Shown here piece by piece: positions 5,728-6,420 of a stretch of 15,903 nt of DNA. Source of the DNA: Octopus sinensis (lineage: Eukaryota). The DNA is taken from positions 1 through 15,903 of the forward strand of contig NW_021825344.1 in the NCBI RefSeq assembly GCF_006345805.1, in the 5' to 3' direction. The position numbers and the translations under genes were made by a program. The notes under the pieces are model-generated. The model did no database searches. It was not told the DNA's origin and worked only from the letters and a program-made list of their open reading frames with translations. The stretch's first letter is position 1, and each line of letters opens with the position of its first letter.

Positions 5728-5942
5728 GGCGCGTGGCTTAGTGGTTAGGGCATTCGGCTCACGACGTTACTGTCGTGAGCTCAATTTTCGGCGTCGCAAG
5801 AGCAAGACATTTTATTTCACATTGCTCCAGTTCACTCAGCAGGCGAAAAATGAGCAGTATCTGCATTTCAAAGGGCCAGCCTTGTCGCACTCCGTGACAT
5901 GCTGAATCTCCCTGAGAACTACGTTAAGGGTACGCGTGTCTG
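5728..5942 (+). mobile_element. tRNA-derived SINE-A, 5' part (interrupted by a SINE-B insertion)
   Basis: Good A box TGGCTTAGTGG, a degenerate B box, and CORE-like gagcaagacattttatttcacattgctccag. It continues at 6311-6420 after a 14-bp duplication. Confidence 0.85.
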
Positions 5943-6310
5943 AAACGTTAGCACGCCGGGCGAAATGCTTAGCAGTATTTCGTCTGCCGCTACGTTCTGA
6001 GTTCAAATTCCGCCGAGGTCGACTTTGCCTTTCATTCTTTCGGGATCGATATAATCGACTTAATACCTATGTCTGTCCTTGTTTGTCCCACCTATGTTTA
6101 GCCCTTTGTGGGTAATAAAGAACTAGGTATTTCGTCTGCCGTTATGTTCTGAGTTCAAATTCCGCCGAGGTCGACTTTGCTTTTCATCCTTTTGGGGGTC
6201 GATAAATAAAGTACCATTTACGCACTGGGGTCGATGTAATCGACTTAATCCGTTTGTCTGGCCTTGTTTGTCCCCTCTGTGTTTAGCCCCTTGTGAGTAG
6301 TAAATAAATA
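5943..6310 (+). mobile_element. Two head-to-tail SINE-B units with Tx1-type tails; unit 1 is 5'-truncated and internally deleted
   Basis: B box GAGTTCAAATTCC occurs twice (~6000 and ~6151), each followed by gaggtcgactttgc.ttcat.cttt and the tail tgtttagccc.ttgtg.gta.taaa. Unit 1 lacks the segment between the two ggggtcgat repeats. Confidence 0.92.
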
Positions 6311-6420
6311 GGTATACGTGTCTGTGGAGTGGTCAGCCACATGCACGTTAATTTCACAAGCGGGCTGTTCCGTTAATCAGATCAGCTGGAACCTTCGTCG
6401 TCGTAACCGACGGAGTCCCA
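6311..6420 (+). mobile_element. SINE-A, 3' part
   Basis: Starts with ggtatacgtgtctg, which duplicates 5929-5942, and runs to cgtcgtaaccgacggagtccca. Continuity with the 5' part is supported by the duplication and by my recollection of the family consensus. Confidence 0.75.

What the first reader, a model, noticed from the sequence alone, without database searches (positions are those of the whole stretch)
5929..6324. SINE-B appears to insert site-specifically at a GGTA-N4-5-RTCTG motif inside other SINEs
All five Tx1-type tails in the window are immediately followed by a related motif: ggtatttcgtctg (6126), ggtatacgtgtctg (6311), and on the minus strand ggtatttcatctg (~9532-9544), ggtatttcgtctg (~9358-9370) and ggtaattccgtctg (14742-14755). 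At 6311 the motif is not the SINE-B version. It is a copy of host SINE-A sequence at 5929-5942 (ggtacgcgtgtctg, 12/14 identical), i.e. a 14-bp target-site duplication around the 5943-6310 insert. The motif therefore behaves as target rather than tail. In the other cases it corresponds to the 3' arm of the extended stem-loop in the SINE-B tRNA-like head. Tx1-clade endonucleases are established as often sequence-specific (Tx1L into Tx1D, Keno into U2 snRNA genes, Mutsu into 5S rDNA, Dewa into tRNA arrays). A Tx1/SINE system that targets tRNA-derived SINEs, including itself, would explain the head-to-tail arrays. The LINE's own 3' flank (gttatcttttcgcct) is only weakly similar.
Basis: partly seen in the sequence, partly recalled or inferred. 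Interest (0 to 1): 0.8.

Follow-up and report, generated by a model that had tools for sequence, protein, structure and literature searches.

The report
Octopus SINE copies stacked at own hairpin
In this octopus DNA, copies of one short mobile element are joined tail-to-head at the same spot in a hairpin of their own family, and one copy sits in a look-alike site in another element. Copies elsewhere in octopus genomes sit at unrelated sites, so this is a local homology-linked preference and not a strictly site-specific insertion system.

Summary
GGTA-N4-5-RTCTG occurs six times in the window (0.56 expected). Five occurrences directly follow a SINE-B "B1" tail and the sixth is the upstream duplicate. 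An intact SINE-A copy from Octopus vulgaris carries a single GGTACACGTGTCTG, so the 5943-6310 insert is flanked by a real 14-bp target-site duplication.

- GGTATTTCGTCTG is positions 48-60 of every SINE-B-family head. It forms the 3' arm of a predicted 13-bp hairpin.
- Four of the five cases are therefore tail-to-own-family-head junctions.
- Eight such heads in 96 kb of O. bimaculoides and O. vulgaris DNA carry no insert.
- The three B1-tailed copies I could fetch outside the window lack the motif in their flanks. Two have clear duplications of 16 and 20 bp.
- Related SINEs with other tails also form head-to-tail arrays, joined at other head positions.
- The Tx1 assignment cannot be tested, because the window LINE keeps no RT or endonuclease domain.

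Best reading: ordinary LINE-mediated retroposition with variable duplications, plus a homology-assisted step that joins B1 units at the family hairpin. A strictly sequence-specific endonuclease is unlikely. The external sample is only three copies, so a genome-wide flank survey is still needed.

The parts
5730..5942 (+). SINE-A (host element), 5' part. It ends with duplication copy 1, GGTACGCGTGTCTG, at 5929-5942.
   Evidence: Continuous with 6311-6425 once the insert is removed. It aligns to an uninterrupted SINE-A in O. vulgaris L002.
5943..6125 (+). U1: SINE-B unit with a B1 tail. It is 5'-truncated (starts at head position 17) and has a 34-nt internal deletion. It belongs to the subfamily with GTCCCAYCTATG...GGTAATAA.
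   Evidence: blastn and MAFFT against the other units.
6126..6310 (+). U2: SINE-B unit that begins at the head motif GGTATTTCGTCTG (6126-6138) and ends with a B1 tail ...GTAGTAAATAAATA.
   Evidence: Matches consensus positions 49-232 at 94%. Motif confirmed.
6311..6324 (+). Duplication copy 2, GGTATACGTGTCTG, followed by the 3' part of SINE-A (to about 6425).
   Evidence: 12/14 identical to 5929-5942. The intact SINE-A has one copy, GGTACACGTGTCTG.
9544..9775 (-). U3: full-length SINE-B with a B1 tail, first unit of array 2.
   Evidence: Consensus positions 1-232 at 94.8%.
9370..9543 (-). U4: SINE-B unit starting at the motif GGTATTTCATCTG (9532-9544), with a B1 tail.
   Evidence: Consensus positions 49-232. 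Motif confirmed.
9328..9370 (-). U5 remnant: the motif GGTATTTCGTCTG (9358-9370), then TCTTT, then a piece resembling the B1 3' region. It abuts an inverted head-like fragment at 9290-9327 (+).
   Evidence: Its structure is unresolved.
14757..14972 (-). Unit a: full-length SINE-B with a B1 tail (...GTAGTAAAGAT).
   Evidence: Consensus positions 1-227 at 88%. Sequence.
14575..14755 (-). Unit b: sister SINE with a different (B2) tail. It begins exactly at GGTAATTCCGTCTG (14742-14755) and has a non-B1 body (GTCTGTCTTTAC...).
14181..14574 (-). Units c and d: two further B2-tailed SINEs in head-to-tail order. Each starts at about head position 22-26, not at the motif.
4359..4398 (-). 3' end of a LINE remnant whose tail resembles the B1 tail. 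Its 3' flank is GTTATCTTTTCGCC.
   Evidence: 80% identity over 40 nt to the B1 tail, E = 3e-5. Alignment.
4758..5069 (-). Open frame of 104 codons upstream of that tail, probably the C-terminal end of the LINE ORF2. It starts with H-x4-C-P...W. No RT or endonuclease is left.
   Evidence: No Pfam family. No word-index homologue. Eight weak phmmer hits, several with the E-T-x2-H-x4-C signature.

Best explanation
SINE-B with the B1 tail is an ordinary tailed SINE. It is copied into the genome by a LINE with the same 3' tail through target-primed reverse transcription. Staggered cuts leave duplications of about 14-20 bp at varied sites, which may begin with a loose RRTAY.

The recurring GGTATTTCGTCTG is not an endonuclease recognition site. 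It is the 3' arm of the hairpin that every SINE-B-family head carries. B1 units become joined tail-to-hairpin because the incoming RNA or cDNA carries the same sequence as resident family members, so one step of integration is assisted by base pairing. That step could be priming by read-through RNA, re-use of a nick with microhomology-mediated 5' joining, or a switch between family RNAs at that point. The result is head-to-tail arrays whose downstream units start at head position 48.

The SINE-A event is the same process at a look-alike site (GGTA...GTCTG).

Shown: the anatomy, the duplication, the position of the motif in the head, the unoccupied heads, and the unrelated flanks elsewhere. Inferred: that base pairing, rather than protein specificity, picks the site.
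For: - The motif is head positions 48-60 in all family members and pairs with positions 31-43.
- Eight heads with the motif in L001/L002 are unoccupied, as is the SINE-A site in L002.
- Outside the window, B1 copies have duplications of 16 and 20 bp with no RTCTG. The third copy (L003) also lacks the motif in its flank, though its duplication is unclear.
- B1 tails abut position 48 of both B1-type bodies (U2, U4) and non-B1 bodies (b, U5). The junction therefore formed more than once.
- The 14-bp SINE-A duplication shares GGTA and GTCTG with the motif. By my estimate the chance of that is about 1e-5, so target sequence matters.
- Units within an array are no closer to each other than to units elsewhere (86-92% identity). 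U1 and U2 belong to different subfamilies. The arrays are therefore not local duplications.
- Both motif copies flanking the body of unit a share the variant TTCCG, seen in none of the other aligned family heads. The 5' head part of unit a carries GAATCG, seen otherwise only in non-B1 copies. This is a hint of insertion into a resident head.
- Sister families also show a target start that mimics the tail end, for example CAATATTTC beside the B2 array (by eye). That would fit priming by annealing.
Against: - The external sample is only three copies.
- Array-internal junctions read AAAGAAACAG, AAAGAACTAG or AAAGATG. All four solo 3' ends instead end in TA(A)/TAAATAA repeats. This fits a template switch or an inherited junction better than a standard priming event at a target.
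- No read-through RNA has been observed.
- The RRTAY start rests on very few sites.
- The possible 8-bp duplication GGTA(A)TTC around unit a (chance about 0.006) conflicts with the nested-insertion reading of the same array. Both cannot be right.
Confidence: 0.45

Rival explanations
1. The partner LINE encodes a sequence-specific (Tx1-like) endonuclease that nicks at GGTA-N4-5-RTCTG. SINE-B and the LINE therefore insert into SINE heads, including their own, and arrays grow by repeated targeted insertion.
For: - Five of five tails in the window abut the motif.
- There is a true duplication of a motif-like site in SINE-A.
- There are hints of nested insertion in array 3.
- A published precedent exists for a Tx1-mobilised SINE with target preference, where tandem copies sandwich a duplication (SINEU-3/Tx1-Mar, PMC4494074).
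Against: - None of the three external B1 copies is at the motif.
- Duplications differ in length and sequence.
- The single LINE 3' end is flanked by GTTATCTTTTCGCC.
- Eight motif-bearing heads are empty.
- Internal junctions lack the normal tail end.
- No full-length insert is flanked by two complete motif copies.
- The LINE clade is unknown.
Confidence: 0.15
2. Single-event concatemers. During one integration the reverse transcriptase leaves a SINE-B-family RNA near the hairpin loop (position 48) and continues on the tail of a B1 RNA. This gives arrays with 5'-truncated downstream units. Target DNA sequence plays no part.
For: - One duplication flanks U1+U2 as a unit.
- Units in an array come from different subfamilies and are of similar age.
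- Internal junctions differ from solo 3' ends.
- Arrays with variable junction positions are common in sister families.
- Template switching between SINE RNAs is an accepted origin of composite SINEs (PMC4824008, PMC4494074).
Against: - It does not explain why the SINE-A duplication resembles the motif, nor the shared TTCCG variant around unit a.
- All four B1 junctions are at position 48, whereas B2 and B3 tails join at positions 1, 12 and 20-26. The position follows the upstream tail, not the downstream RNA.
- A stall would be expected at the base of the hairpin, not after its 3' arm has been copied.
Confidence: 0.2
3. The motif belongs to an extended tail or to a multimeric master element. 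Arrays would then be copies of a dimer or trimer source, or products of unequal crossing-over.
For: Two junctions in array 2 are identical (AAAGAAACAGGTATTTC). The junction lacks the TAA end seen in solo copies.
Against: - At 6311 the downstream 14-mer is the SINE-A version, not the SINE-B version.
- External solo copies carry no motif after the tail.
- Downstream partners include non-B1 units (b, U5).
- Units within an array share no private mutations.
Confidence: 0.08

Closest known systems
SINEU-3 / Tx1-Mar of crocodilians (Kojima 2015, PMC4494074)
   Same: A SINE and a LINE insert preferentially into another transposon. Tandem SINE copies arise at the site.
   Different: [quoted passage not shown] The duplication sequence is expected to have been the same in many cases (AGGTTCCCATCAGCAT), the tandem copies sandwich that duplication, and the LINE is placed in the Tx1 clade by RT phylogeny. 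Here 3 of 8 copies sit at sites that lack the motif, duplications vary, the sequence between tandem units is the SINE's own head rather than the duplication, and the LINE clade is unknown.
Site-specific Tx1-clade LINEs (Tx1L in Tx1D, Keno in U2 genes, Kibi and Koshi in microsatellites; summarised in PMC4494074)
   Same: The idea of an AP-type endonuclease with sequence preference that creates nested or tandem insertions.
   Different: No evidence here of a constant target for the LINE itself. The window holds no RT or endonuclease sequence to place the element.
Composite and dimeric SINEs made by template switching between SINE RNAs (discussed in PMC4824008 and PMC4494074)
   Same: Head-to-tail joins of SINE modules from different source RNAs. 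Downstream modules are 5'-truncated.
   Different: Those events create new transposing families. Here the joins recur at one head position at several loci and with different partners, and one event has a look-alike target in an unrelated SINE.
Priming helped by pairing of downstream (read-through) RNA with the nicked target, as described for R2 and R1 elements (my own knowledge, not checked here)
   Same: It would explain homing of an RNA that carries 3' sequence identical to the target.
   Different: Those elements have strict protein-determined targets in rDNA. Nothing here shows read-through SINE-B RNA.

Membership tests
Target-specific Tx1-clade LINE/SINE system | The LINE groups with the Tx1 clade by RT (and AP-endonuclease) phylogeny. 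| not testable with these tools
   The window LINE keeps only about 104 C-terminal codons and the 3' UTR. It has no Pfam hit and no homologue in the word-index search. There are only weak phmmer hits to unnamed short ORFs. No full-length partner was found in L001 or L002.
Target-specific Tx1-clade LINE/SINE system | Most SINE copies genome-wide are flanked by the same target sequence. | tested here: not met
   5 of 8 B1 tails abut the motif, but none of the 3 outside the window do. The sample is small.
Target-specific Tx1-clade LINE/SINE system | The LINE copies share the SINE's target. | tested here: not met
   The one LINE 3' end (4359, minus strand) is followed by GTTATCTTTTCGCC. That is a single copy only.
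Target-specific Tx1-clade LINE/SINE system | The target-site alteration is constant in sequence and length. | tested here: not met
   Duplications of 14, 16 and 20 bp with unrelated sequences.
Tailed (stringent-type) SINE with a LINE partner | The SINE's 3' tail is shared with a LINE 3' end. | tested here: met
   The B1 tail against window 4359-4398: 80% identity over 40 nt, E = 3e-5.
Tailed (stringent-type) SINE with a LINE partner | Dispersed copies are flanked by target-site duplications. | tested here: met
   Window 14 bp, L001 16 bp, L002 20 bp.
Tailed (stringent-type) SINE with a LINE partner | The head derives from a tRNA and has an internal Pol III promoter. | tested here: inconclusive
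   ARAGORN and Rfam find no tRNA. By eye there is a B-box-like GAGTTCAAATTCC, and a 5'/3' stem GGCGG/CCGCC appears in the fold.
SINE superfamily defined by a shared central domain | The same central sequence appears behind different heads and in front of different tails, in more than one lineage. | tested here: met
   Three tails (B1, B2, B3) sit behind one head and core in octopus. The 37-nt core also sits behind an unrelated tRNA-like head on the JGI metagenome contig L004. I could not establish which named superfamily it is, because the text of PMC4824008 prints no sequence.

The most novel reading that the evidence does not exclude
The B1-tailed SINE-B, and perhaps its LINE, homes to the hairpin of SINE-B-family heads. 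The guide would be either an endonuclease that reads the motif or hairpin, or an RNA-guided step in which read-through transcripts pair with the nicked target. The family would then build its own landing pads and grow head-to-tail arrays. That would be a self-targeting SINE in a cephalopod.
Probability: 0.3. Interest if true: 0.65.

Novelty: new variant of a known kind. Interest (0 to 1): 0.4.

Why it matters
SINEs make up more than a tenth of octopus genomes (11.6% in O. vulgaris, PMC13282606), and how they pick sites is little studied. If B1 units really are drawn to their own family's hairpin, that would be a simple route from dispersed SINEs to tandem arrays and satellite-like DNA. It would also be a natural case of homology-guided retroposition. 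If the arrays are only template-switch concatemers, the locus is an ordinary, if tidy, example of known LINE/SINE behaviour. Either way, the strong claim of a site-specific Tx1 system should not be carried forward without a genome-wide flank survey.

Tried and rejected
**Searches that found nothing**
- Exact-pattern scans for the B1 tail in JGI metagenome contigs, GTDB genomes and IMG/VR gave no match.
- A scan for the SINE core gave one non-octopus contig (L004) and nothing in GTDB.
- A full-text search for three SINE-B strings gave no paper.
- A protein search with the LINE C-terminal remnant found nothing.
- Full phmmer gave 8 weak hits. The two long ones (P0125, P0129) are unrelated repeat proteins.

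**Routes to more octopus DNA**
- A protein search with the second LINE fragment (12324-12830, minus strand) found relatives at 70% identity or less on short metagenome contigs and in crustaceans. It gave no octopus locus.
- Exact look-up of 20 window ORFs showed none in the collection, so the window's own contig could not be extended.
- The look-up of P0124 found no gene on record.
- What worked was a chimeric query of SINE-B reading frames, which hit three octopus proteins and one unnamed ORF on a short ENA metagenome contig. Three of the four look-ups returned DNA. These were L001 and L002 (96 kb of octopus DNA) and L003, the 543-bp contig from that ORF. They held only three B1 tails.

**Readings I rejected**
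- Local duplication of units is rejected by the star-like identities.
- Chance is rejected.
- An Rfam scan of the window returned only microsatellite-driven miRNA noise.

**Left open**
- I first read 9290-9327 as an inverted SINE head into which array 2 was inserted. The alignment is ambiguous, so I left it unresolved.

Full report
**What the window is.**
The 15.9-kb window is repeat-rich animal DNA, full of microsatellites and SINE and LINE debris. The window is therefore from an octopus. Through those hits I obtained three loci:
- L001, 76 kb of O. bimaculoides
- L002, 20 kb of O. vulgaris
- L003, a 543-bp contig from an ENA metagenome that carries the same SINE

**Checking the observation.**
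GGTA-N4-5-RTCTG matches at the six places named. That is 6 against 0.56 expected, and no shuffle reached 6. Self-comparison defines the following units:
- U1 (5943-6125) and U2 (6126-6310) on the + strand
- U3 (9544-9775), U4 (9370-9543) and a remnant U5 (9328-9370) on the - strand
- unit a (14757-14972) on the - strand, followed by three sister units b, c and d (14181-14755) that share head and core but carry a different tail (B2)

Five tails of the first kind (B1...TGTTTAGCCCCTTGTGGGTAGTAAAGAAA...) each end directly before a motif match. A LINE remnant on the - strand ends at 4359 with a similar tail (80% over 40 nt). It is followed by GTTATCTTTTCGCC.

**The duplication is real.**
Removing 5943-6310 joins the two halves of SINE-A. 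An uninterrupted SINE-A in O. vulgaris (L002 8840-9050, minus strand) reads GTTAAGGGTACACGTGTCTGTGGAGTG, with one copy of the 14-mer. The window's two copies, GGTACGCGTGTCTG and GGTATACGTGTCTG, each differ from this by one base.

**What the motif is in the other cases.**
GGTATTTCGTCTG is positions 48-60 of the head of every member of this SINE family, preceded by GAAATGCTTAGC. In the predicted fold of the consensus it is the 3' arm of a 13-bp hairpin and pairs with positions 31-43 across a 4-nt loop. U2, U4, U5 and b are therefore units that start at head position 48 and are joined to the tail of the unit upstream. In L001 and L002, eight heads carry the motif in its normal context with no insert. 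The SINE-A site in L002 is also empty.

**Copies elsewhere.**
Only three further B1 tails could be reached, and none has the motif in its flank:

| Locus | Copy | Duplication or flank |
|---|---|---|
| L001 | full-length | 16-bp duplication AATAMTATAAGGCCTA, 15/16 identical |
| L002 | full-length | 20-bp duplication GTATATKTTCAATRTTTTCA, 18/20 identical |
| L003 | full-length | flank TTAAGTTGCC, no clear duplication |

Duplications of 14, 16 and 20 bp at unrelated sequences are what a non-specific LINE makes. The starts GGTAC, AATAC, (A)GTAT and GGTAT hint at a loose RRTAY nick preference. This rests on very few sites and I treat it as a lead only.

**Arrays are a family trait.**
- Units c and d follow B2 tails and start at about head position 22-26.
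- In L001, three SINEs with a third tail (B3) stand head-to-tail with full heads.
- Other B3 tails are followed by heads starting at about position 12 or 20, and older relatives are also in tandem.

Head-to-tail stacking is thus not special to the B1 tail or to the motif. What is special is that all four B1 junctions fall at position 48.

**The arrays are not local duplications.**
Units are 86-92% identical to one another whatever array they sit in, and are closest to the L002 copy. U1 shares subfamily changes with L003 that U2 lacks. Downstream partners include B1-type bodies (GTCTGCCGTT..., U2) and non-B1 bodies (GTCTGTCTTT..., b and U5). The tail-to-position-48 junction therefore arose several times.

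**Clues to mechanism, which point in different directions.**

*For a role of the target sequence:*
- The SINE-A duplication shares GGTA and GTCTG with the motif. By my estimate the chance is about 1e-5, given the post hoc pattern.
- The motif occurs at only about 7e-5 per position in octopus DNA, mostly within these heads.
- In array 3, both motif copies around the body of unit a share the variant TTCCG, seen in none of the other aligned family heads. The 5' head part of unit a carries GAATCG, seen otherwise only in non-B1 copies, and it looks more diverged than a's body (small numbers). This fits a B1 body and tail inserted into the head of a resident B2 element.

*Against a standard priming event at a target:*
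- The four internal junctions read AAAGAAACAG (twice), AAAGAACTAG and AAAGATG.
- All four solo 3' ends finish in TA, TAA or TAAATAA repeats.
- A single duplication flanks U1+U2 as a pair.

*An unresolved conflict:*
- A possible 8-bp duplication GGTA(A)TTC around unit a has a chance probability of about 0.006. It conflicts with the nested reading, so one of the two is coincidence.

**Best explanation.**
I favour ordinary LINE-mediated retroposition with variable duplications, plus a homology-assisted step that joins B1 units at the family hairpin (confidence 0.45). The assisted step could be any of these:
- pairing of read-through RNA with a nicked family head
- re-use of a nick, with the 5' end joined through the shared motif
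- a switch between family RNAs at that point

The rivals:
The external copies, the LINE flank and the variable duplications speak against it.
- Pure template-switch concatemers get 0.2. This model explains the odd junctions and the mixed subfamilies, but not the look-alike SINE-A target or why the junction position follows the upstream tail type.
- An extended tail or a multimeric master gets under 0.1.

**The Tx1 label.**
The LINE remnant keeps only about 104 codons before its stop (4758-5069, minus strand), beginning H-x4-C-P...W.
- It has no significant Pfam match; the only listed hit is far below cut-off (E = 0.14).
- The word-index search found nothing.
- Full phmmer found eight weak matches. 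The short ones look like LINE C-terminal pieces with E-T-x2-H-x4-C, and none is named.

A Cys/His motif after the RT occurs in several LINE clades (my own knowledge), so it does not identify Tx1. O. vulgaris does hold recently active L1-Tx1 families (PMC13282606), which makes the assignment possible but untested.

**Comparison with the literature.**
The closest published case is SINEU-3 with Tx1-Mar in crocodilians. There 86 of 88 truncated copies are associated with one mariner family (77 directly flanked by it), the duplication is expected to have had the same sequence in many cases, and tandem copies sandwich that duplication (PMC4494074). The octopus case fails the corresponding tests: there is no common target outside the window, the duplications vary, and the sequence between units is the SINE's own head. 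It may work partly like that system but cannot be filed with it.

The shared head and core behind three tails, together with the same 37-nt core behind a different head on a non-octopus metagenome contig, mark SINE-B as a member of a central-domain SINE superfamily. I could not name the superfamily from the papers at hand.

**Limits.**
No octopus genome could be scanned by DNA. The external sample is 96 kb plus one short contig, holding three B1 tails. The window is unusually rich in B1 tails (five in 16 kb against two in 96 kb), so it may not be typical. The decisive test is the genome-wide flank survey set out under next steps.

Noticed in passing
L001 10001-66298; L002 10001-10351: The annotated proteins O. 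bimaculoides LOC106868243 (P0121), an O. vulgaris 'hypothetical predicted protein' (P0123) and UniRef A0A0L8HIF0 (P0124) contain stretches that are translations of SINE-B, sense or antisense. P0123 is essentially one SINE-B copy read in frame. These are likely annotation artefacts or exonised SINEs.
   Followed up: partly
L004 6440-6613 (JGI metagenome contig Ga0066187_1002493): A different tRNA-like head (GGCGGCGTGGCATAGTGGTAATGG...) is followed by the same core, GGTCGACTTTGCCTTTCATCCTTTCGAGGTCGATAAA. The SINE-B core is therefore a conserved central domain shared with a non-octopus organism. I did not identify the superfamily.
   Followed up: partly
window 14181-14755 (-); L001 65990-66640 (-), 3790-4600 (+), 69439-69750 (+): Sister SINEs with two other tails (B2 ...GGCCTTGTGCCAAAATTTGAAATCAATATTT and B3 ...GGCCTTGTGCCTAGAATAGAAAAGAATATA) also stand in head-to-tail arrays. 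They join at head positions of about 1, 12 and 20-26. By eye, their target starts mimic the tail end (CAATATTTC, AATATTC).
   Followed up: partly
window 9290-9327 (+): A fragment resembling the first 37 nt of a SINE-B-family head lies in the opposite orientation and abuts the 3' end of array 2. It might be the disrupted target, an inversion made during integration, or a misread old tail.
   Followed up: partly
window 12324-12830 (-) and 15040-15250 (+): Two fragments of the C-terminal part of a LINE ORF2 (...LSRLDYCSQLWSP...ERLKQLRLYSLERRRERY...). The best relatives are 65-72% identical ORFs on short ENA and Logan contigs, and about 50% in crustacean genomes. Array 3 is inserted into the second fragment.
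   Followed up: partly
window 11990-12420 (+): An open frame that, by eye, resembles the N-terminal helix-turn-helix region of mariner-type transposases (...SRRRAPNRNEETIENVR.IIIEDRRVKIQEIEREVRISRGSVRSIL). Pfam gave no hit.
   Followed up: partly
window 3925-4320 (+), 13790-14150 (-), 15520-15650 (+), 240-340 (+): Several copies of another abundant SINE (head GGAGTGGCTGTGTGGTAAGTAGCTTG...). The LINE 3' end at 4359 abuts the 3' end of one of them. Another tRNA-like SINE lies at about 6960-7200 (-).
   Followed up: no
L001 40788-40797: A 10-N assembly gap sits inside the B1 SINE-B copy, with the same 55 nt repeated on both sides. This looks like an assembly artefact that mimics a dimer.
   Followed up: no
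window 340-950, 1040-2620, 5060-5470, 8080-9000, 9820-10380, 10660-11760: Very long compound microsatellites, including (GATA)n, (ACAT)n, (TGA)n, (TG)n and (TATG)n. They produce spurious miRNA-family hits in Rfam.
   Followed up: no
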